A stretch of DNA of 61,564 nucleotides, counting the filler, from Dugesia japonica (lineage: Eukaryota): NCBI GenBank assembly GCA_001938525.1. It is 6 parts of 6 records of this genome, joined end to end, with 100 filler letters (N's around TTAATTAATTAA, not from the genome) between each part and the next. Parts side by side here need not be neighbours in the genome. Positions count along the whole stretch, not along the records: positions 33,584 to 42,233 come from MQRL01551104.1; 5 more parts are not named here. One strand, written 5' to 3'. How positions within the stretch are numbered: position 1 is the first letter of the stretch; every line of letters starts with the position of its first letter. Under the pieces are notes generated by a model. The model did not search any database and was not told where the DNA came from. It saw only the letters and a program-made list of their open reading frames with translations. Positions 33,297 through 44,100 of the stretch are shown piece by piece. Both the position numbers and the translations under genes were made by a program.

Positions 33297-33727
33297 GTAA
33301 GTCAGCATAATATTATTTATATTAGCATTTATCTTATCAAATTGTTGCAAGCGATTTATAATTAAGTTAATAAATAAAAATTTAATTTTAAAATTGTTTG
33401 TTTGATTTTCTTTTAATGTTACAATTTAATATACAATTTTTGATTAACTTTATGCTGATTGTTTCGGAAAATTTTGAGATCATNNNNNNNNNNNNNNNNN
33501 NNNNNNNNNNNNNNNNNNNNNNNNNNNTTAATTAATTAANNNNNNNNNNNNNNNNNNNNNNNNNNNNNNNNNNNNNNNNNNNNTGATTTTTGTTTAAATT
33601 AACGAAATTAATGATTCTTTGTTTAAATTTAATGAAATTAATAATTGAGTTTCTTGGAAAAGCTTGTTTGTTTTAATTTAACAAAATTAATCGAATGTGA
33701 TTTTATCGAATTTCCCCACCCCCCCTT

Positions 33728-34240
33728 AGGAGCCCATTGCCTCACATACTTTTTTTATATGTCCGCACTGCCTTACATGCTTTTTTTATAGGTGCGCACT
33801 GCCTCATTTTTTTTCTTTTCTTCAGGAGCGCACGGCCTCATATTTTTTTTAATTGATGGATTTTATTTTATTTAAGTTTTTTTGTTTAAATTAAGTGAAA
33901 TTAATGATTTTTGTTTAAATCAAGTCTAATTATTGATTTTTTTGTTTAATTTAAATGAAATTATTGATTTCTTGATTAAAGTAATGAGTTATATTGGAAG
34001 TAAATTACCCCGGGTAATATTAACAATAATTTTCAACGTTCCCCGGGCAATATTAACATTAATTGCTCAGGTTTCATACTATTGGTTGTTCAATAGTTCA
34101 TACTATTAGCTGATCCAGAGCTCATACTAGTGTATTCTCCCTGGCTTATACTATTAGATGGTCCCTGATCAAACTATTTAATGCTCTGGACATTGAATGT
34201 TCACAGTTCCATTTAAACTAGCTGCTCAACCGAAGAATCG
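33728..34240. repeat. Short tandem arrays: ~33-nt GCACTGCCTCA-polyT units (33728-33850), a CCCCGGG dimer (34005-34070) and ~22-nt CATACTATTAG units (34075-34240)
   Basis: Units are visible directly in the sequence. Confidence 0.6.
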
Positions 34241-35352
34241 ATTACTATTCCAAGGAAAATCATTCTTAATATTTATATTTAAGAAAAATTACTCTTTGCC
34301 TTCGTATAATTTATGAAATCAGTATATTATTTGTATTTAAAGTAAAAATAATATCAAAAGTATCATTAAAATTATTTTCATTTTCAGTTTTGTTTGAATT
34401 CCATACCATTACATTACCTTTAAGATTGCCTTCTTATATTTATAGACAATAATTTTTGTTTTGAATTTATAGCACATCTGCAATGTCTTGTTTTATTTAT
34501 TAAAATTTTACTAATTTATCGCGCAAACCTTGTATATATAATAGTTTGAGTAACTGAGTAATTAATAAATTATTAAATCTGTGAGAGGATTCGTGGTTAT
34601 AGTTATTTAATTTATCAATTATCCCCAGACAGTTAATTTTTAGGGTCGTTTGTGTTATTCGTTGGTCAATCCACCGAAGTCAATTATTACTTGTAAAATT
34701 TCAGTACTGTGAAATAATTGTTACTTCTAGATGAGTTGATTTGGCGAGCGAATGGTTAATTTTAGTCCAGCATATAAGTCGACAGAATGTAACATTATTG
34801 AGGTCCACCCGGTATTTAGTCATTCATTCACGTAGTTAAACTTACTAGCTTAATTGTCTAAATTTTTTTAGTTGTTTATTAATTTGATAGTTATATTTTC
34901 GAATTTATTTATTAAATTTTAGCTAATTAATTTTTAGATAGTTATTTCATTGATTTTAATCAACTCTCTTAGTTATGGATTTTTATTGAATTTAATTGTG
35001 ACTTTCATTTAATCGGTTTTTTAGTTATTTCACTGATTTTGATTATGACTCTTAGTTAATTGATTTTTATCGAACGTAATTTTGACTTTTAGTTAATTAA
35101 ATATTAGCTTGTTATTTGATTAGTTTTTAAAAATGACCCTTATTAAATAAATACCATAAAATAAAGAAAATCCAAAGAAATCATAGAATTATTATATATA
35201 CTGTTTGCTATATAATCTGCGTTTATAAATTAAACGTTACGAAAATTAAATTTACAATAATAGTATTTTTTAAAAAAAATTTAACAATTAAATTTAATAA
35301 CTTTAGCATAAAAAAGAGTAACTAAAAATTCTAAAACAAGAAAATATATTTT

Positions 35353-35658
35353 TTAATTAACAGTTAATTCTCCTCCATTTAATTTTGCAAAATTGAATTT
35401 TGAAGACTCATTATCAATGGTGCAACCAATTGATCTGGCTGTACATAAAATTTCTTTAACAGTATCTTGTAAAGTTTTACCACATGATCGTGATCTCATA
35501 ATCTTGGCAATTTCAATGATGGAATCAAAATTGATATTACCATCATGTTTAATGTTCTTGACCTTTTAACTATCAGAGTTGATTTTTCAATTCTTTCACC
35601 AATAGAGAAGCTGCATTTGGCACAACAGAAATTTCAGCTTTTATAGTTAACTTTTTAT
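35353..35658 (-). pseudogene. RPL12: 60S ribosomal protein L12 (uL11) pseudogene, 3' part
   Basis: AEISVVPNAASLLVKELK, then a frameshift and stop, then KVKNIKHDGNINFDSIIEIAKIMRSRSCGKTLQDTVKEILCTARSIGCTID. Confidence 0.85.
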
Positions 35659-37119
35659 NNNNNNNNNNNNNNNNNNNNNNNNNNNNNNNNNNNNNNNNNN
35701 NNNNNNNNNNNNNNNNNNNNNNNNNNNNNNNNNNNNNNNNNNNNNNNNNNNNNNNNNNNNNNNNNNNNNNNNNNNNNATTATATAAATTCACTATAAATT
35801 TTCACGCATTGTTGTTAGTAGCAATTTAATTAATGCATTGTTTAGTATGCACAATTGTTCACAGGATTAAATTATTTATTATTCTTAGAATGCCCATTTG
35901 CCGTATTTAGCTTTTACTTATTGTCTCTATTAACTATTTATATTGTTGGGATACAACACAACCATATTTATTTATCTCCATCAAAACAATTGAGGAAGCA
36001 AAATAACTAACGAATAAGTAAAAAGTAAGAAAATAAAAGTAATTATTCAAAATAATCTGATTATTATTGATAAAATTAACATCAGCCGCCAAATTCGAAT
36101 GGTTATTTAATATGAAACAAAAAAATAACCATATCACCAAAACATATTCGCAAATTATTAAAGAAAAATTCAGAAAAGAAACCAGCTAACTGAAAATATG
36201 GAACGAAATATAAGGAAATAAGCAAATTATTCCACCGAGATCCACGAATCCGTGGCAGATGAATACGGAAAGAAAAGGTATAAAAGAACCAACTACTTTA
36301 TACAAAAAAAANNNNNNNNNNNNNNNNNNNNNNNNNNNNNNNNNNNNNNNNNNNNNNNNNNNNNNNTGTTAATTAAATCGACATAATTCTTCTTTTTTTT
36401 TTGCTCCAAACTCAATTTTTATCAGAACAATTATCCCAATAATTGCGATCGATTCTCAACCGATTTTCAGCTTATCAATCGCTAATTATTCCCAGAATTA
36501 ATATTTAACCGAGCGTTAGAAAATCCCTGAAGAAGAAAAATTATAATCAGAAGACAATATTATTATCCGTCGCGACAATCGATCATATCCTAACAGTTTA
36601 AAATCGTTCCAATCTCAATCCTAGTGAGAAATCTCATCTGCTCTCAGTCATGTCCTGCAATCCAAAGAATGAAATCATTAAATGTAACGTACATTATTGA
36701 ACTTGTTATGGTGTATTCAATGATAAAATATTTAGAACTATAATTGGTAATTGGATAACTTTTATTGTATATTCATTTAAAGTTATTTCAAACGCAGGAA
36801 CGAGAGAAAAGGTTGGGATTGTCGATATGAATTTAATTGTGCAATAAGGAATCACCCTTGAACTTCGCTTGATTATGTTGGTACTACCACGCCAGTGTTA
36901 TCAATACATGAGTGGTCAATTTATTGTAGTTGACCCATTGAGACTGTGATCAGTGAGCGTTCTGTCAGAATCGCGATTACGGTACTGGAAATTCTCAATC
37001 CCGGAATCCCGATGCTAGCACCGGGAATTTAAATATTTGAAGAAATATAACGATATAATTTAATTTAATTATAGATAATATAAATATTATAAAAATACAA
37101 GTAAAATAAAATAAATAAA

Positions 37120-37395
37120 TTGAATACAAATCAAATCTCAAATGGATATATTTCTCAAGAACTGGTTAAAAATCACCACTCTAAAGGATCTAAACCAGCA
37201 AAACTATATCGTTTACCTAAAGTTTATAAGAATGGAGTTCTTATGCGACCGGTTTTTTCTATGGTTTGTAAAGCACAATATAAGATCATGAAATATTTGG
37301 ATTCTCAATTAAAACCACTAATGAATTCAAGCTTTGAATGTAGTACCTTTGAAAGGAGTACCTTTCGGATAACAAACATCAAAAGGAAATTCTAA
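37120..37395 (+). mobile_element. Penelope-like reverse transcriptase N-terminal fragment
   Basis: GSKPAKLYRLPKVYKNGVLMRPVFS..YKIMKYLDSQLKPL resembles LYGLPKVHK..P.RPI.S. Confidence 0.8.
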
Positions 37396-38861
37396 AGAGA
37401 ATAATTGTATAAATACCCGTTAAACCCAGAGGTGGACATCAAATAGTGCAAATAATAAAATATAACAGTACTTGTGTTTGAGGTAAATACTGTTACACTT
37501 CAAGTTATATAATCAATAAAATATAATATTATTGTAAAAATTTTGATCCGAAACAAATCAATATCATTACTTCAACATTTTCTTATTCGATTTGAACATA
37601 AAAAATTGTTATTTTGTTTATAAAATTGTTAGGGTGAAACACATGCTCAGAAAGGCAACAAAGCCTAAACTCAAAGTCCACAAAAAAGAACAATAAAACC
37701 CGTAAAATTACTATCAAGAGAATTCAAAAGAAGAAAGTAATTATGATTCAGGAGGGTTATAATGAAAATAATCAGGAATAAAGAATACAAGCAGAGGGAA
37801 TACCACGAACCAGTGACCTAAAACAACATACATTCATATCAGAATTAAAAAGAATTAATGAAAAATTATTTTAAAATTCAAGAAAATTAGTATAAGGAAA
37901 TTGCTAATTAAGAAAAGAAAATATTAATTAATTTGGAAATAAAAATCGGAATCGAACCGAAAATCAGTTTTTCATGATTAACTCCGTTCAGGAAAGTCGG
38001 AGAGAATCCGGTTAAGAAAATTCAAGAAGAAAATAACAAGGGGCATTGAGATTTACCAGGAAGAAAAACCTACCATCACCCAGAAAGCTGCTGCAGTGTC
38101 CACAAGATTGAACCAATAGGAGGCCTAAAAATAAAAATAAAACAAAGAAGGAACCATCACATGGCCATCTAAAAATACTTACCAATCAGAGCTCTAAAAC
38201 TCTGTAAAAATTCTGGAATCATGGANCTAGCACCAATAAGACACTGGTATTTGAAAATAAAAATACCCTCCAATAAGAATGATGCCGAGTAGCATCAGAA
38301 AATCATATAAAAGGACCCCTAACTTTAGCAGAAAAAACAACAATTTTTGCGAAAAATTATTAGTATTAAATTGCACCGTATTAATTTCTGTGGATAATTA
38401 ACCTTGGTGAAAAAACGTTCAGAATATTACCATTTTAATCAAGCGTAAGGCAGAACCATTTGCAGTTGTTAGTTCTGAATTCATTCTAATTTTATAGGAG
38501 AGAGCTACTCAGTCGGTAGAAAAAAGAAAAAAAATCAAAGTCGGAATTGAAATAATAGTTGGAACTTCAAATTACGTTTGTTTAGCCCGTTGCAGAATTA
38601 CCACTTGATATTAAAAGTAAAAATTTGTTGTTATTATTATATGTCAATTAGATAATAAAAATGTCAAATAAATATCGTTTTTAAATTTAATAAATCCTCG
38701 ATAATAAATAAATAATCATGAAAAAAATTAATAAAAATAAACTCAAATTTTTATTTAAGATAGTTATTTATTCTACAATCAAACTCAACAAAATTTTTCT
38801 ACTAACCACTGAACAAATAGATAACCGCAATAAGAAGTATTTTCTTTTTATTCACTTCTGA

Positions 38862-39484
38862 CAGCACAATGAGTTCAGAATCCTTAAGACACCCCTATTA
38901 AGCGACGCAGAGCAAATTCAGAAAAATCTGAACATCAAGAATCGAGAGATAATAACTTTACCCAGCCCGACGAACTCACATGCTACGGTAGATTTATATA
39001 TTCCCTTATAGTAATATATTAATGGAATGTTAAAATCTATAGATTCAGTCTTTTCAGCCATGGATAATCAATCCCCAAAATGTGTGCGAGATGTGCATAG
39101 TCCTGGACGAATTGGAGACCGAACTGCTGATGAATCCACAACTAAATTGGACACAAAATATGAAAATACTGATTCATCTAATACACATCATGAGTTCACA
39201 GACATATCATCACTTGTCAAGTTTAAGTGCTCAACAAATTCCCGACATCGCAATTGGCATGTCAGTTTATCGTACCGACAATATACTCAGAATGTGTAAA
39301 GATATAATGAACTGTTCAAACAAAGTGGGCTCCAATATGCTCTCGGTCAAGAAGAAATGTCTCCTTCAGGTTTTATATATTTCAAATTAAATATTAATTA
39401 ATAAATAATTAGGCTACAGGCATCTACAGCTGTATTTTGAATTTAAGGAGAGCATTCACTTCTCCGTGGCCAGAAATCGCCTAA
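38862..39484 (+). CDS. Overprinted alternative-frame ORF across Rep introns 1 and 2 (174 stop-free codons; first in-frame ATG at 39091)
   Basis: Exons 38862-38987, 39043-39369 and 39413-39484 join in phase 0 with no stop until TAA at 39482-39484. Confidence 0.55.
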
Positions 39485-40356
39485 TGGTACCATTCGCTAC
39501 AGCTATCCACGAAAACGATAAGCAGCGGATACGGGATTATGTGACAAAAGCTGAAACTCGTGTGCATAATGGTGTTGTAATTAATTTCGGAACACCCAGT
39601 AAGTGCAAGATTAACAAACAGGATATTTGGAATAATTTATTAAACTGTTCTAATATGAATGAGGCAATCGATCTATTAAAAAAAGAGATCCATTTACATA
39701 TATCACTAAAAAAATGTATCATTGAAAATTTAAAAAGCGAGTATGGTGAAATTATTGATGCTAAATATTTAAAATTCAAACATCCGTTTTTTGACGTGTA
39801 CGATAATATAACACACGTATTTATCGGCAAATCAGGCATTGGAAAGACTAGTTTCGCACTAGCTCATTTCACACGTCCATGCTTAATAACAAACAGGCAA
39901 AGCTTTAGTCTTATCACAGAGAATAATAATGGATTGGTGATCGATGACATAGATTTCCGCAAGTGGCCTGTCACCGAGCTCATACATTTATATGACTGCG
40001 AGTATGACAGTATGATTGACATCAAGTATTCAACAGCTCGTATCCCAAAAAGAATGCCGAGAATTATTTGTGTAAATGACATAAGTATGATATTCCCTTA
40101 TGATGTTATTCAATCTACTCGCGAAGCATTAGAACGACGATTACAAATACACTATTTAAATGATAAATTATTCTTTATGACTGATTTAACACCAGTAATT
40201 AAATTATATAAATCAATAATAATATTTATTTTATTTCAGCGGAAAGTATCGAAATTAACAAATCCGTATCGTCAACAAATGCAGGATGTCAAATTAAGAA
40301 TGTTAACGGACAGCAATTCGACTCCTACAATTCAAACCGTTGATTTGGACGAATAA
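38869..40356 (+). pseudogene. rep: Spliced CRESS-DNA-virus-like Rep (HUH endonuclease plus SF3 helicase); predicted introns 38988-39042, 39370-39412 and 40195-40239; one in-frame TAA at 39297
   Basis: Motif I-like RNWHVSL, motif II GQEEMSPSG|YRHLQLYFEF (restored by splicing), motif III DYVTKAETR, Walker A GKSGIGKT, Walker B LVIDD, motif B' IDIKYSTARIP, motif C IICVN, Arg finger ALERR. Confidence 0.88.
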
Positions 40357-40542
40357 AATGTCCAGGCTGCCATTCGGAACTCTCTCTTAGTATTTATTCG
40401 AATATAAAAAAATTTGAATAACTTTAATTTAGTTGATAGTGATTGGATGTCATGTGTGTATTGATTGTTCCGTTATTCATATAAAATAAATGTTTTAATC
40501 AGTTTATTTATTCTTTTATGGATTTTAATAAATTTATAGTTT

Positions 40543-41151
40543 ATGAAAAACTTTATGATTTTATATGAAAATTTTATTAGTAGTAATACTTTTTATTTTA
40601 ATAAGCAATTTACTGTCATTCTCAATAATTTTATTAAAAAACATAATCTCAATATTACGGAAGAAGCTAATCCCATCAATTATCGTATTTGTGCAATTGG
40701 CCTTGTTCTATTGCTACAATCCGGCAAGACAACTTGTATATTACTTGATGGGGTATCTAATGCCGGTAAGTCCCTTTTCCTGAAGATTTTCTCAGCAGGT
40801 CTAGATATCGGATCATTCAGTCTCATTCATATGCAAAGCGAATTTTGCTTCGATAATCTCATCAATAAAACAATAGGGATCGGTGAAGAAGTTACTCTAG
40901 ATTTCAGAGTCGGTGTCAAAAATGGACCAAAAGCTATGTTAAAACCAATGCCATTCATCGTATGTGGAAATCTTCCTATATGGACATATTTATCCAGTGC
41001 AAAAGAGGCTATACTCAACAGATGCATATATATTCCTTGCACCAAAGAAATATCCATTGACATTAATGTTAATCTAAACAATTATATTGATGAGTTCAAA
41101 AAAGTAAAAATAGATGTACTTAATCGTGTTTTTAAAAATATAATTATTTAA
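40543..41151 (+). CDS. Parvovirus NS1-like SF3 helicase domain (no HUH domain seen; short deletion after Walker B)
   Basis: KTTCILLDGVSNAGKS (Walker A), FCFDNLINKTIGIGEE (Walker B, EE type), RVGVKN (B'), PFIVCGN (C), AILNR (Arg finger). Confidence 0.82.
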   Translation: MKNFMILYENFISSNTFYFNKQFTVILNNFIKKHNLNITEEANPINYRICAIGLVLLLQSGKTTCILLDGVSNAGKSLFLKIFSAGLDIGSFSLIHMQSEFCFDNLINKTIGIGEEVTLDFRVGVKNGPKAMLKPMPFIVCGNLPIWTYLSSAKEAILNRCIYIPCTKEISIDINVNLNNYIDEFKKVKIDVLNRVFKNIII

Positions 41152-44100
41152 TGTATGACTCATTTCTAAACTTCCTAAAGTAAATGTAATTATATAGAAA
41201 ATTTCTATAATATAACTTTCAGATAGAATCAACCAATCAGATTACGAGTGCTTAAGTAACAAACAAACCTATAATTAAGCATTCACTTATAAAAGTTATA
41301 CGATGACTCATAAATTATTGAATGCCCGGGGTTTGTTGAGGCTTAAGGAATAATTAAATGATCTATATAGATGCTTCAAGCAGCCATGGCTGCTGATTCA
41401 ACGACCCATGGGTCGTATACGCATCTATACGTCCTACGATAAGATAAAATTCCACCAGGATAATTTCACTGAGATCTACCATCAGGTCATAATCTGCTAA
41501 AATCCCGTTATATGACAACGGCATGGAATTTTGGGGAGAGCAACGAGTTTCACTTGACAATAACAGCACGTAAATTGATCCTCCGTTGTAACATAAAATG
41601 TTGAATATTATAATTTCCTCTCTTACAACGTTGCTAATCATGATTCATAGCAAGTGTGTAACGAATTCAGTAATGTCCACTAATGAAACCCAGTAATGTC
41701 TACTAATGTCCACACATTGGACTCTAATAACAATTCATTTACGCTGCAGTTGAAACCGGATAAACAAATTAAACATACCCACTTAGGTAATACACACCGA
41801 AGATGACAAAGTCCAATTTAACATACCGTAATCTAATTCGTTACCATGGGGGGGANNNNNNNNNNNNNNNNNNNNNNNNNNNNNNNNNNNNNNNNNNNNN
41901 NNNNNNNNNNNNNNNNNNNNNNNNNNNNNNNNNNNNNNNNNNNNNNNNNNNNNNNNNNNNNNNNNNNNNTTATTATTATTACTATTATTATCATTAATAT
42001 TATTATCATTATTATTACTATCAACTTCATAGTTATTATAGGTGTTTTTAATTATTAATGCGATCTTACTTGCCATTGCCGTTATCAAGATCATTGCCAT
42101 TGAAATTATCCATATTATGGGTATTATTCCTATTATTCGTATTGCTAGTATTATAATTTTATCAGTACCCGTTTATGCATTTATATTCTAGCGTCATTCT
42201 CATCATCATCTTTATTATGGTATACAGCCCTATNNNNNNNNNNNNNNNNNNNNNNNNNNNNNNNNNNNNNNNNNNNNTTAATTAATTAANNNNNNNNNNN
42301 NNNNNNNNNNNNNNNNNNNNNNNNNNNNNNNNNAAAAAAAACTGCTACAAAATTTAAAAGATAAACAAATTAATTTTCAAAATTTCTATTTTTTTTATTG
42401 AACCAAAATTTTTGACAGAAAACAGTAATTAAATGGGAAAAATAAAATAAATCTCTTGTATAATATTCTAAAATATTTTTTATCCAAACAGCCATTTGAT
42501 GCAAACAATTTCCACAACCGTTTCAAATGTCCAATTTTTGATTTTTTTGGTTTTAACATTTGTTCATTCTACCTAAAAAAAAATTTTTTTAAATTAATTA
42601 AAATAAATAATTTAAATTGTTTTTTGACTAATCAAGTTTTGTTAAAAATAAATTCAAATAAAATCGCGAATATTATTTTAACAGAATTTCCCAAGAGTTT
42701 TCAAAAACAACTCTTGGGAATTTGCATTTGAGAAATAATTATTGTTTAATATTACATTTATTTTCATAAATAGTAATAAATGATAAAATAATGAAATTAT
42801 GAATTAATATTTGTCTGGATTAAAATAAGTTTTTTAATGTCGATAAGAAATTTAAATTTTAAATTAACAAAATTATTACTTTAAAGATATTATTACACAA
42901 AGATCTATCTATCTATATATTTATCTATCTATCTATATGTCTATAAATGATTTATAGTCCAGTTCAAAATAACCTTGTTAAGACCAGTTTTATAAAAAAA
43001 TTTTACGTTAAATAACTACTAAATAACTAAAATATTTAGAATGCAAAAAGAAATTAAAGATTATATAAAACACAAATAAAGGAGAATAAACAGCAATCAG
43101 CAAGTTATTCATAAATAATGTATTCGCTTTTTTCTCAAAATGACTGGGTACCTTTTACCAATTTTATTTGAAATTGAACAGAAATAACTAATTTATTAAA
43201 ATCATGAAATTTATTAGAATAATTCCCAGTCATTCGGTATTTATTTGGTTTGATTAAAGAATTTTCTTATAGATTTCCGATTAACTATGATTAGATATTG
43301 GAAATTATTTAGCATTTCAGTTCTAACACCATGTAGGTAGTATAAATTAATTAATTTCTACCGATATTTTGATATTGATATATTTTTATGTATTTAAATA
43401 GAATGATAATTGGTTTCCTTGATAAATTGCTGATTCACTGTTATGTACAAACCAGTACAAATTTTAGGTCAAATTTATAATTAATTTTTCATAATTAATT
43501 TACTATTTCAAATTTATTAATTCAATTTTTTGTTAATTAATTTAAGAATAAAATGTTTATCAAAGTTATGAACATAATTTGTAAAATTCAAACTTTCTTA
43601 ATTTCATTTATAAAGTAACTGGTAATATATTCTTGTTCAAATCTTTTTAAATATTTTATCTTACTAAAACACTTGTTAATCAAACAAACAAGTTAATATA
43701 TTATTCACAGCTTTAAAATTTAGAGTGGGACATATTTTACGAGAAATAGAATTTCGTATTTGTAATAATTTTAAATAAACTCCGGTTCAATTCGATATAT
43801 GAAAAATTAGGCTTTTTCCACTTTTCTATATGAACCATTTTCATTGATTTCAACCTTCGTTGTTAATCACATGTTTTACATTTATTGTCATACACTGTTG
43901 CACTGAGTATTTCATTTCATCTACATTTTTTATAATGTTAATAACAGTCAATGGAGTTAAGTTCTACTTAAATAGAGACGTCTACAATTTTTTATTGATC
44001 GATTTTCAGTGATTTTTTATTTTGTAAATTGTAGTTTGTTTAATCACACCATTTTCATTATTGAAAAATAACATTTATTTGAAATATATTTTTGCCCACT

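What the first reader, a model, noticed from the sequence alone, without database searches (positions are those of the whole stretch)
38869..41151. Endogenous ssDNA-virus-like cassette with two unrelated SF3 helicases: CRESS-type Rep followed by a parvovirus NS1-like helicase
Seen: a full HUH+SF3 Rep ends at 40356, and 186 nt later a second same-strand ORF carries a separate complete set of SF3 motifs (GVSNAGKS, IGEE, RVGVKN, IVCGN, AILNR). Established: CRESS viruses and parvoviruses each encode a single SF3 helicase. The EE Walker B and RVxVK motif are parvovirus NS1-like, whereas LVIDD/IKYSTARIP is of the gemini/genomo/CRESSV6-like type. Inference: this is a chimeric CRESS-parvo replicon or a Rep-based mobile element with an accessory helicase. 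I do not recognise this architecture from described families. Both genes lie on one contig.
Basis: partly seen in the sequence, partly recalled or inferred. Interest (0 to 1): 0.88.

Follow-up and report, generated by a model that had tools for sequence, protein, structure and literature searches.

The report
Decayed planarian-type two-helicase virus relic
This stretch is a decaying genomic copy of a little-studied but already described kind of flatworm DNA virus-like element (PEVE/PIVE) that carries both a circovirus-type replication protein and a small parvovirus/papillomavirus-type helicase, so the odd gene pair is real but not new.

Summary
Two same-strand ORFs lie 186 nt apart, and each carries its own complete set of SF3 helicase motifs. 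The first is a CRESS-type Rep: a profile of its relatives matches the solved circovirus-type Rep over its full length (E 5e-21). The second is a 202-residue helicase-only protein. A profile of its relatives matches parvovirus NS1 (2e-27), AAV Rep40/68 (4e-26) and papillomavirus E1 (1e-20). The two share only remote SF3 kinship, so this is not a duplication. The architecture is already described. [quoted passage not shown] The Rep model's sixth-best viral fold match is the Rep of the type 2 element. Liu et al. 2011 record an integrated relative, PIVE, in Schmidtea mediterranea. The copy here looks decayed. The Rep gene is not one ORF (one in-frame stop, one frame change that may be a short intron). 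The helicase lacks about 17 residues that all 12 aligned relatives have. A T-shaped palindrome sits 215 nt downstream. Verdict: an endogenous PEVE/PIVE-like element, a new member of a known kind, of moderate to low interest.

The parts
39192..40356 (+). Rep gene of CRESS type (HUH endonuclease plus SF3 helicase), broken: one in-frame stop and one change of reading frame. The frame change is flanked by GT..AG and may be a short intron. The longest open part is the 296-codon ORF that ends at 40356.
   Evidence: frames. (4 relatives, E 9e-26 to 4e-13). (32 relatives with the profile). (profile positions 47-300 of 305, E 1.7e-60). (outer bounds 39192-40173, two frames). (solved circovirus-type Rep 7lar, E 5e-21, full length). 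(CRESS Reps, and the Rep of planarian element type 2 at E 1.5e-18).
39811..40155 (+). SF3 helicase core of the Rep (residues about 116-230 of the 296-codon ORF). It keeps all 17 columns that are invariant among 33 aligned relatives, including the P-loop Gly/Lys/Thr, the Walker B Asp-Asp, the sensor Asn and the Arg finger.
   Evidence: invariant columns. (AF2 pLDDT 90-97 across this stretch).
40357..40542 (.). 186-nt A+T-rich spacer between the two genes.
40543..41151 (+). Helicase-only gene (202 codons): an N-terminal three-helix bundle plus an SF3 core of the NS1/Rep40/E1 type, related to the PEVE helicase. It has one in-frame internal deletion of about 17 residues relative to all 12 aligned relatives.
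   Evidence: 26 relatives, best E 3.2e-22. [quoted passage not shown] (BLASTP 1e-21, 28% identity, residues 9-183). (alignment and invariant columns). (Pfam hits of the relatives). (PDB profile hits). (model pLDDT 85.7 and fold matches).
40726..41040 (+). SF3 core of the second helicase (residues about 62-166). The P-loop Lys, Walker B Glu, sensor Asn and Arg finger are kept.
   Evidence: invariant K62 G70 G75 K76 F101 L106 E116 K126 P137 N143 R160..
41366..41429 (.). T/Y-shaped palindrome: a 9-bp outer stem enclosing two perfect palindromes (41379-41394 and 41401-41416). It is a candidate terminal hairpin or origin structure. That it belongs to the element is inferred from position only.
   Evidence: DNA fold -17.3 kcal/mol, z -4.24, 0 of 200 shuffles as stable. 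(most stable of 987 windows of the piece). (each palindrome unique in the window, about 0 expected)..
41668..41708 (+). Two 18-nt direct repeats (94% identical, spacing 23) that give a short word recurring every 11-12 nt. Iteron-like, but weak evidence.
   Evidence: family D8. Tandem Repeats Finder does not call it.

Best explanation
The cassette is the replication module of an integrated, decaying copy of a PEVE/PIVE-type element. These are DNA virus-like elements of planarian flatworms that carry two SF3 helicases of different origin.

Gene 1 is a CRESS-type Rep. In live relatives, its HUH endonuclease would nick an origin and stay linked to the DNA through the motif III tyrosine, and its own SF3 domain would unwind.

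Gene 2 is a small helicase-only protein built like AAV Rep40: a three-helix oligomerisation bundle plus an SF3 core, with no nuclease or origin-binding domain. By analogy it would form a ring and act as an accessory motor, either as a replicative helicase or, as Rep40/52 do in AAV, to thread single-stranded DNA.

Shown here: the homologies, the domain make-up, the retained catalytic residues, the adjacency of the genes and the counts of breaks. Inferred: the biochemical roles, and that this copy no longer works. The inference of decay rests on one stop and one frame change in Rep, and one internal deletion in the helicase core of gene 2.

The T-shaped palindrome 215 nt downstream may be a terminal hairpin or origin. 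That is an inference from its shape and position.
For: - Gene 2: of 26 hits among 1.84 billion representatives, the six with E <= 1e-10 are short proteins of 122-244 aa. One of them is the named PEVE type 1 helicase. Pairwise with it, E 1e-21 over nearly the full length.
- The best viral fold match of the gene 2 model is an unnamed 227-residue entry, Q91S73, the same length as P0010. Parvo/denso NS1 proteins follow.
- Best solved fold matches of gene 2 are AAV2 Rep40/68, then E1. Profile against PDB: NS1 2e-27, Rep40/68 4e-26, E1 1e-20.
- 22 of 26 relatives of gene 2 match PPV_E1_C and 20 of 26 match Parvo_NS1.
- Gene 1: 32 relatives sit on contigs of 1-3.6 kb, and 15 of 33 match Viral_Rep. 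Solved circovirus-type Rep, E 5e-21.
- The Rep of planarian element type 2 is the sixth-best viral fold match (E 1.5e-18, 29% identity). It falls within a top group of nine that is set apart by five orders of magnitude.
- The two genes are 186 nt apart on one strand in one gap-free block.
- Literature: PIVE, an integrated relative of PEVE, occurs in Schmidtea mediterranea (PMC3198968).
- From my own memory of Rebrikov et al. 2002 (BMC Genomics 3:15; not held): PEVE carries a circoviral Rep homologue and an E1-like helicase.
- Context fits a cellular A+T-rich genome. Flanks are 18-30% G+C against 32-38% in the cassette, and an RPL12-like exon with a Ribosomal_L11 domain (E 1.3e-11) lies on the same scaffold.
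Against: - Identity to the named planarian proteins is low (28-29%), so this is a distant member at best.
- The host was not identified. Exact look-ups of both ORFs found nothing.
- I could not compare gene order or termini with PEVE or PIVE, because their DNA was not fetched. Only my memory of a paper I could not read says that PEVE holds both genes in one molecule.
- No long inverted repeats flank the cassette in this piece, and no second copy of the hairpin exists.
- The cellular gene lies beyond N gaps, so integration rests on scaffolding plus 2.5 kb of ORF-poor A+T-rich DNA in the same block.
- The closest Rep relatives whose contigs I had read (L001-L007) carry no second helicase.
Confidence: 0.8

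Rival explanations
1. The locus is one copy of a repeat family that multiplies inside the host genome (a Rep-bearing transposon-like element, as Liu et al. describe PIVE) rather than a one-off viral integration. The two proteins would then serve intragenomic spread.
For: Liu et al. 2011 draw PIVE with terminal inverted repeats and report 'numerous' NS1-like sequences in S. mediterranea. A strong T-shaped palindrome lies just downstream.
Against: No terminal inverted repeats, target-site duplication or second copy was found in this piece. Both genes show decay. Copy number could not be measured with these tools.
Confidence: 0.3
2. Two independent integrations, a CRESS Rep fossil and a parvovirus-like NS1 fossil, landed next to each other by chance.
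For: Both kinds of fossil are common in invertebrate genomes (PMC3198968). The closest Rep relatives with known contigs are ordinary Rep-plus-capsid genomes without a second helicase.
Against: The genes share a strand, lie 186 nt apart and have similar G+C. Each has a planarian virus-like element among its best named matches. Gene 2 is a complete helicase-only protein like its relatives, not a fragment of a long NS1.
Confidence: 0.05
3. The block is an episomal element, or a contaminant, joined to host sequence by scaffolding. It would then not be endogenous.
For: N gaps separate the block 36367-41856 from the only clear cellular gene. PEVE itself is extrachromosomal and was 'not found to integrate'.
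Against: The block holds about 2.5 kb of ORF-poor DNA at 25-30% G+C upstream of the cassette. The Rep gene carries an in-frame stop and gene 2 an internal deletion, which is unexpected in a replicating episome.
Confidence: 0.1
4. One or both genes are domesticated host genes still in use.
For: The helicase cores keep every invariant catalytic residue. A GT..AG stretch at the frame change, and a second in-frame one near the 3' end, would fit host-type introns.
Against: There is an in-frame stop in the Rep endonuclease part and a deletion inside the core of gene 2. No identical gene call is on record.
Confidence: 0.07

Closest known systems
[quoted passage not shown] 2002; NCBI taxid 159252 for type 1, unclassified viruses)
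   Same: It has a helicase-only NS1/E1-like SF3 protein of about 227 aa (P0010; E 3e-11 in the library search, 1e-21 pairwise, alignment over nearly the full length). It has a CRESS-type Rep (type 2 Rep, fold match E 1.5e-18). From memory of the paper, one element carries two helicases of different viral ancestry.
   Different: Identity is only 28-29%. PEVE is extrachromosomal and was not found integrated, whereas this copy sits in A+T-rich, ORF-poor DNA and is broken. From memory, PEVE has two unique regions flanked by inverted repeats; none were found here. Gene order could not be compared.
PIVE, the integrated virus-like element of Schmidtea mediterranea (Repbase 2008; Liu et al. 2011, PMC3198968)
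   Same: It is an integrated relative of PEVE in a planarian genome, with an NS1/E1-like protein (PIVE_1p) that groups with the PEVE small segment and the parvoviruses.
   Different: It was not available for comparison. Whether this locus is a PIVE copy, or a related family in another flatworm, is open.
AAV Rep40/Rep52 (small Rep proteins of dependoparvoviruses)
   Same: The build is the same: a short helical bundle plus an SF3 core with no nuclease domain. These are the best solved fold matches (E 1.4e-06, TM about 0.57) and score 4e-26 with the profile.
   Different: In AAV the small Reps are made from the same gene as the large Reps through an internal promoter. Here the protein has a separate gene beside an unrelated CRESS Rep. 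Identity is 14-19%.
Circovirus-type Rep of Cressdnaviricota
   Same: It has HUH motifs II and III and an SF3 helicase. The profile matches the solved circovirus-type Rep 7lar over its full length (5e-21), and relatives sit on 1-3.6 kb contigs, some with a circovirus-like capsid.
   Different: Neither the long ORF nor the two upstream pieces that I scanned reaches any Pfam Rep model. No capsid gene and no nonanucleotide stem-loop were found nearby. A second helicase gene follows.
Parvovirus-derived endogenous elements of invertebrates (the acorn worm repeat and DENSOV_HM of Hydra, in Liu et al. 2011)
   Same: These are NS1-like helicase sequences fixed in animal genomes, some with a terminal hairpin.
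   Different: Those carry a full NS1 and a parvoviral coat gene. Here there is no NS1 nuclease domain and no coat gene, and a CRESS Rep is present instead.

Membership tests
PEVE/PIVE-like planarian virus-like elements | A small helicase-only SF3 protein related to the PEVE helicase | tested here: met
   P0010 (the named PEVE type 1 helicase) is hit at E 3.2e-11. BLASTP gives 1e-21 and 28% identity over residues 9-183 against 21-211. The top viral fold match is a 227-residue entry.
PEVE/PIVE-like planarian virus-like elements | A CRESS-type Rep related to the planarian elements' Rep | tested here: met
   [quoted passage not shown] This is a structure-plus-sequence match only. No direct sequence search returned it.
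PEVE/PIVE-like planarian virus-like elements | Both genes carried by one element | tested here: met
   In this window they lie 186 nt apart on one strand in one gap-free block. For PEVE itself this rests on my memory of Rebrikov 2002, which is not held.
PEVE/PIVE-like planarian virus-like elements | Unique regions flanked by long inverted repeats (TIRs in PIVE) | tested here: inconclusive
   Only A+T-rich, low-identity inverted pairs were found. One T-shaped palindrome is present, without a partner. An N gap starts at 41857.
PEVE/PIVE-like planarian virus-like elements | The host is a planarian flatworm | not testable with these tools
   No eukaryotic genome collection is at hand, and exact look-ups of both ORFs found nothing. 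The composition (18-38% G+C) is compatible but not specific.
Cressdnaviricota Rep | HUH endonuclease motifs I, II and III with the catalytic Tyr | tested here: inconclusive
   Motifs II and III with the Tyr are in the long ORF; Y25 is nearly invariant in 33 sequences. Motif I lies upstream in another frame and is only weakly supported. The gene has one stop and one frame change.
Cressdnaviricota Rep | A C-terminal SF3 helicase with Walker A, Walker B, motif C and an Arg finger | tested here: met
   All 17 invariant columns are kept. pLDDT is 90-97. Solved circovirus-type Rep 7lar, E 5e-21.
Cressdnaviricota genome | A stem-loop origin with a nonanucleotide in the loop, and a capsid gene | tested here: not met
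   The pattern has 7 matches against 3.3 expected, none in the loop of a stem. The one long ORF in the 0.7 kb downstream (92 codons, - strand) has no Pfam hit, and I saw nothing capsid-like in the six-frame translation.
Parvoviridae NS1 | An SF3 helicase domain of the NS1 family | tested here: met
   This is met at the level of the family profile and the fold: NS1 2e-27, 20 of 26 relatives match Parvo_NS1, and viral fold matches are NS1 proteins. The window's ORF alone reaches only PPV_E1_C at E 0.0068, below the cut-off.
Parvoviridae NS1 | An N-terminal HUH nuclease / origin-binding domain fused to the helicase | tested here: not met
   The ORF has 202 residues, and only three helices precede the core. 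A stop lies two codons before its ATG. Its closest relatives are also 122-244 aa.
Parvoviridae genome | Terminal hairpins and a VP coat gene | tested here: inconclusive
   One small T-shaped palindrome (64 nt) is present downstream. No second one and no coat-like ORF were found.
Papillomavirus E1 | An E1 helicase domain together with an origin-binding domain | tested here: not met
   There is helicase similarity only (E1 1e-20 with the profile; 22 of 26 relatives match PPV_E1_C). There is no room for an origin-binding domain.

The most novel reading that the evidence does not exclude
This is a distinct, deep-branching lineage of two-helicase elements (only 28-29% identical to PEVE). In it a CRESS Rep, a Rep40-like motor and a parvovirus-style T-shaped terminal hairpin belong to one replicon. 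That would be a natural link between rolling-circle CRESS elements and rolling-hairpin parvoviruses, possibly with a spliced Rep.
Probability: 0.12. Interest if true: 0.7.

Novelty: new member of a known kind. Interest (0 to 1): 0.35.

Why it matters
PEVE-like elements are the only described DNA elements that pair a CRESS Rep with a parvovirus/papillomavirus-type helicase. They have hardly been studied since 2002. A further, distant, integrated copy shows three things. The pairing is old and conserved enough to be found at 28-29% identity. Such elements do enter genomes. The pair can sit head to tail within 200 nt. The locus also offers a dated fossil for the history of SF3 helicase exchange among small DNA viruses. 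It does not reveal a new kind of system.

Tried and rejected
- Single-sequence searches were nearly blind. Pfam, PHROGs, NCBIfam and PDB gave nothing significant for either ORF. The word-based protein search found nothing for the second ORF. Only the exhaustive representative search did.
- Scans of viral contigs with each ORF found no relative.
- Exact look-ups of both window ORFs, meant to name the host, found nothing.
- No tRNA and no Rfam family was found in the piece.
- The bacterial promoter/terminator scan is not informative for this DNA.
- A ciliate genetic code as an explanation for the in-frame stop was rejected. The long ORFs are free of TAA/TAG and end at TAA, and the frame change would remain.
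- A second structured region at 36880-37025 was tested as a possible left end. It has z -1.7 and no similarity to the right-hand palindrome, so I rejected it.
- Nonanucleotide origin: no match sits in a stem-loop.
- The 92-codon minus-strand ORF 41363-41641 as a capsid remnant: no family hit.
- The PEVE paper itself could not be read.
Full report
WHAT IS THERE

The piece 33584-42233 is A+T-rich, at 18-38% G+C. It has three runs of N. Its two longest ORFs lie on the + strand: a 296-codon ORF ending at 40356, and a 202-codon ORF at 40543-41151. At this composition a stop is expected about every 13 codons, so neither ORF is a chance frame (my arithmetic). Both sit in one gap-free block, 36367-41856.

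GENE 1 IS A CRESS-TYPE REP, BUT IT IS BROKEN

- The long ORF has 4 relatives by single-sequence search (E 9e-26 to 4e-13) and 32 with a profile of these. All lie on contigs of 1-3.6 kb.
- 15 of the 33 aligned sequences match Pfam Viral_Rep and 2 match Gemini_AL1_M.
- The profile matches the solved circovirus-type Rep 7lar over its full length (E 5e-21).
- The ORF keeps all 17 invariant columns of the alignment, including the P-loop, Walker B, the sensor Asn and the Arg finger. It also keeps the nearly invariant motif III Tyr.
- The AlphaFold model has mean pLDDT 80.7, and 90-97 in the helicase core.
- A profile built without the window's row matches the long ORF at positions 47-300 of 305 (E 1.7e-60).
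- The first roughly 45 profile positions (motif I and what follows) are found only weakly, upstream and in another frame: E 0.001 in one pairwise comparison, E 0.037 and E 0.95.
- The outer bounds of all similarity are 39192-40173.

I count one in-frame stop and one change of reading frame. The frame change is bordered by GT and AG. Read by eye against relative P0001, the distance between the motif I Trp and the motif II His equals that of P0001 if that stretch is skipped, so a short intron is a fair model. No tool predicted this intron and no relative shares it. I therefore searched the pieces apart, by reference, and left the joined step out.

GENE 2 IS A HELICASE-ONLY SF3 PROTEIN OF THE NS1/REP40/E1 GROUP

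- On its own the ORF reaches only PPV_E1_C at E 0.0068, below the cut-off. It has no PDB hit and no word-based hit.
- The exhaustive search of 1.84 billion representatives gave 26 hits. The six at E <= 1e-10 are all short proteins of 122-244 aa.
- Of the 26 aligned sequences, 22 match PPV_E1_C, 20 match Parvo_NS1 and 12 match DUF5906.
- Their profile matches parvovirus NS1 (2e-27), AAV Rep40/68 (4e-26) and papillomavirus E1 (1e-20) among solved structures.
- The model (pLDDT 85.7, pTM 0.82) is three helices followed by an alpha/beta core.
- Its best solved fold matches are AAV2 Rep40/68, then E1. Its best viral matches are a 227-residue unnamed entry, then parvo-, denso- and bidnavirus non-structural proteins.
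- The ORF keeps all 11 invariant columns of a 13-sequence alignment. It lacks one run of about 17 residues, inside the helicase core, that all 12 relatives have. The model's confidence dips there.

THE TWO HELICASES ARE NOT DUPLICATES

BLASTP between the two ORFs gives E 0.32. The two family profiles align at 96.5% probability but with 15% identity over 114 columns. That is the remote kinship of all SF3 helicases.

IDENTIFICATION

[quoted passage not shown] It aligns with gene 2 over nearly its full length (1e-21, 28% identity).
[quoted passage not shown] It falls within a top group of nine that stands five orders of magnitude above the rest.
- Liu et al. 2011 (PMC3198968) state three things. 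This element (PEVE, of Girardia tigrina) had not been found integrated. An integrated relative, PIVE, is recorded in Repbase for Schmidtea mediterranea. PIVE_1p and the PEVE small segment group with the parvoviruses.
- From my own memory of Rebrikov et al. 2002 (BMC Genomics 3:15), PEVE carries a circoviral Rep homologue and an E1-like helicase. I could not read that paper here.

CONTEXT AND ENDS

- The cassette is richer in G+C (32-38%) than its flanks.
- Upstream in the same block lie about 2.5 kb without long ORFs.
- Beyond N gaps, an RPL12-like exon (Ribosomal_L11, E 1.3e-11) marks cellular DNA.
- No convincing terminal inverted repeats or duplications were found.
- 215 nt after gene 2 lies a 64-nt three-way palindrome, 41366-41429, made of a 9-bp outer stem and two perfect inner palindromes. 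Its DNA fold has z -4.24 and no shuffle of 200 is as stable. It is the most stable of 987 windows of the piece, and its arms are unique in the window. Its shape recalls parvoviral terminal hairpins. I treat it as a candidate end or origin, not as shown.
- A pair of 18-nt direct repeats follows at 41668-41708.
- The contigs of the Rep's closest relatives (L001-L007) are ordinary CRESS-like genomes, some with a circovirus-like capsid. They hold no gene 2 relative.

MECHANISM

In live relatives, the Rep would nick and prime rolling-circle or rolling-hairpin synthesis. The small ring helicase would act as an accessory motor, on the model of AAV Rep40/52. Both roles are inferred from homology. This copy is most likely a fossil.

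RIVALS

- It may be a genomic repeat family that spreads by itself (0.3; this does not exclude the main reading).
- Two independent insertions may lie together by chance (0.05).
- It may be an episome scaffolded into host DNA (0.1).
- One or both genes may be domesticated (0.07).

VERDICT

This is a new member of a known kind, with interest 0.35.

LIMITS AND SLIPS

- I did not fetch the DNA of the named planarian element, nor of the unnamed contigs that encode the closest helicase relatives. Fetching a virus of animals is barred by any road, and I cannot tell what those contigs are.
- Loci L001-L007 (relatives of the Rep from metagenomes and sequencing runs) were fetched before the planarian link was known.
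- Profiles, not sequences, were built for searching.
- Early in my reasoning I noted the place of one break.
- In my reasoning I counted residues across the frame change by eye, in a short string that held letters of both frames.
- Notebook entry 1 describes the frame change by its neighbouring residues and gives approximate coordinates for a second, in-frame GT..AG stretch near the 3' end of the Rep ORF.
- The references given abut a break.
- The ORF coordinates cited as references in this report also bound the breaks loosely.

Noticed in passing
window 41366-41429: A T/Y-shaped palindrome: a 9-bp outer stem around two perfect palindromes (41379-41394 and 41401-41416) that share the same 6-nt centre. 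It is the most stable 96-nt fold of the whole piece and has no second copy in the window.
   Followed up: yes
window 41668-41708: Two 18-nt direct repeats (94% identical, 23 nt apart) that give a pentamer recurring every 11-12 nt. They look iteron-like but fall below the Tandem Repeats Finder threshold.
   Followed up: partly
window 35356-35565 (- strand): An RPL12-like exon (Pfam Ribosomal_L11, E 1.3e-11). An earlier part of the same protein seems to lie just upstream (about 35575-35658) in another frame, next to an N gap. It is either a cellular gene with a short intron or a pseudogene.
   Followed up: partly
window 37120-37395 (+ strand): A 91-codon ORF whose middle looks to me, from memory only, like the N-terminal part of a retroelement reverse transcriptase. 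It has no Pfam hit at E <= 0.1.
   Followed up: partly
window 33587-33968 and 33735-33796: Tandem A+T-rich repeats of about 30 nt (4 copies of a 60-nt reference) and a 31-nt pair ending in a T run. This is ordinary satellite-like DNA at the left end of the piece.
   Followed up: no
window 40190-40240: An in-frame, stop-free stretch with GT at its start and a pyrimidine run plus AG at its end, near the 3' end of the Rep ORF, just after the point where all relatives end. It may be a second intron, or simply read-through into a tail that is not conserved (pLDDT below 50 from residue 272).
   Followed up: no
L003 88-993 (+), also L004: A Tara Oceans CRESS-like contig that carries the Rep relative P0004 and a circovirus-like capsid. 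It also has a 301-residue ORF with a weak match to the N-terminal (endonuclease) part of the Rep profile (E 7.8e-08), so it may hold a second Rep-like gene.
   Followed up: no
window 41970-42040: An ATT/ATC-rich simple repeat directly after the N gap. It reads as poly-Asn/Ile in several frames. This is low-complexity DNA, not part of the cassette.
   Followed up: no
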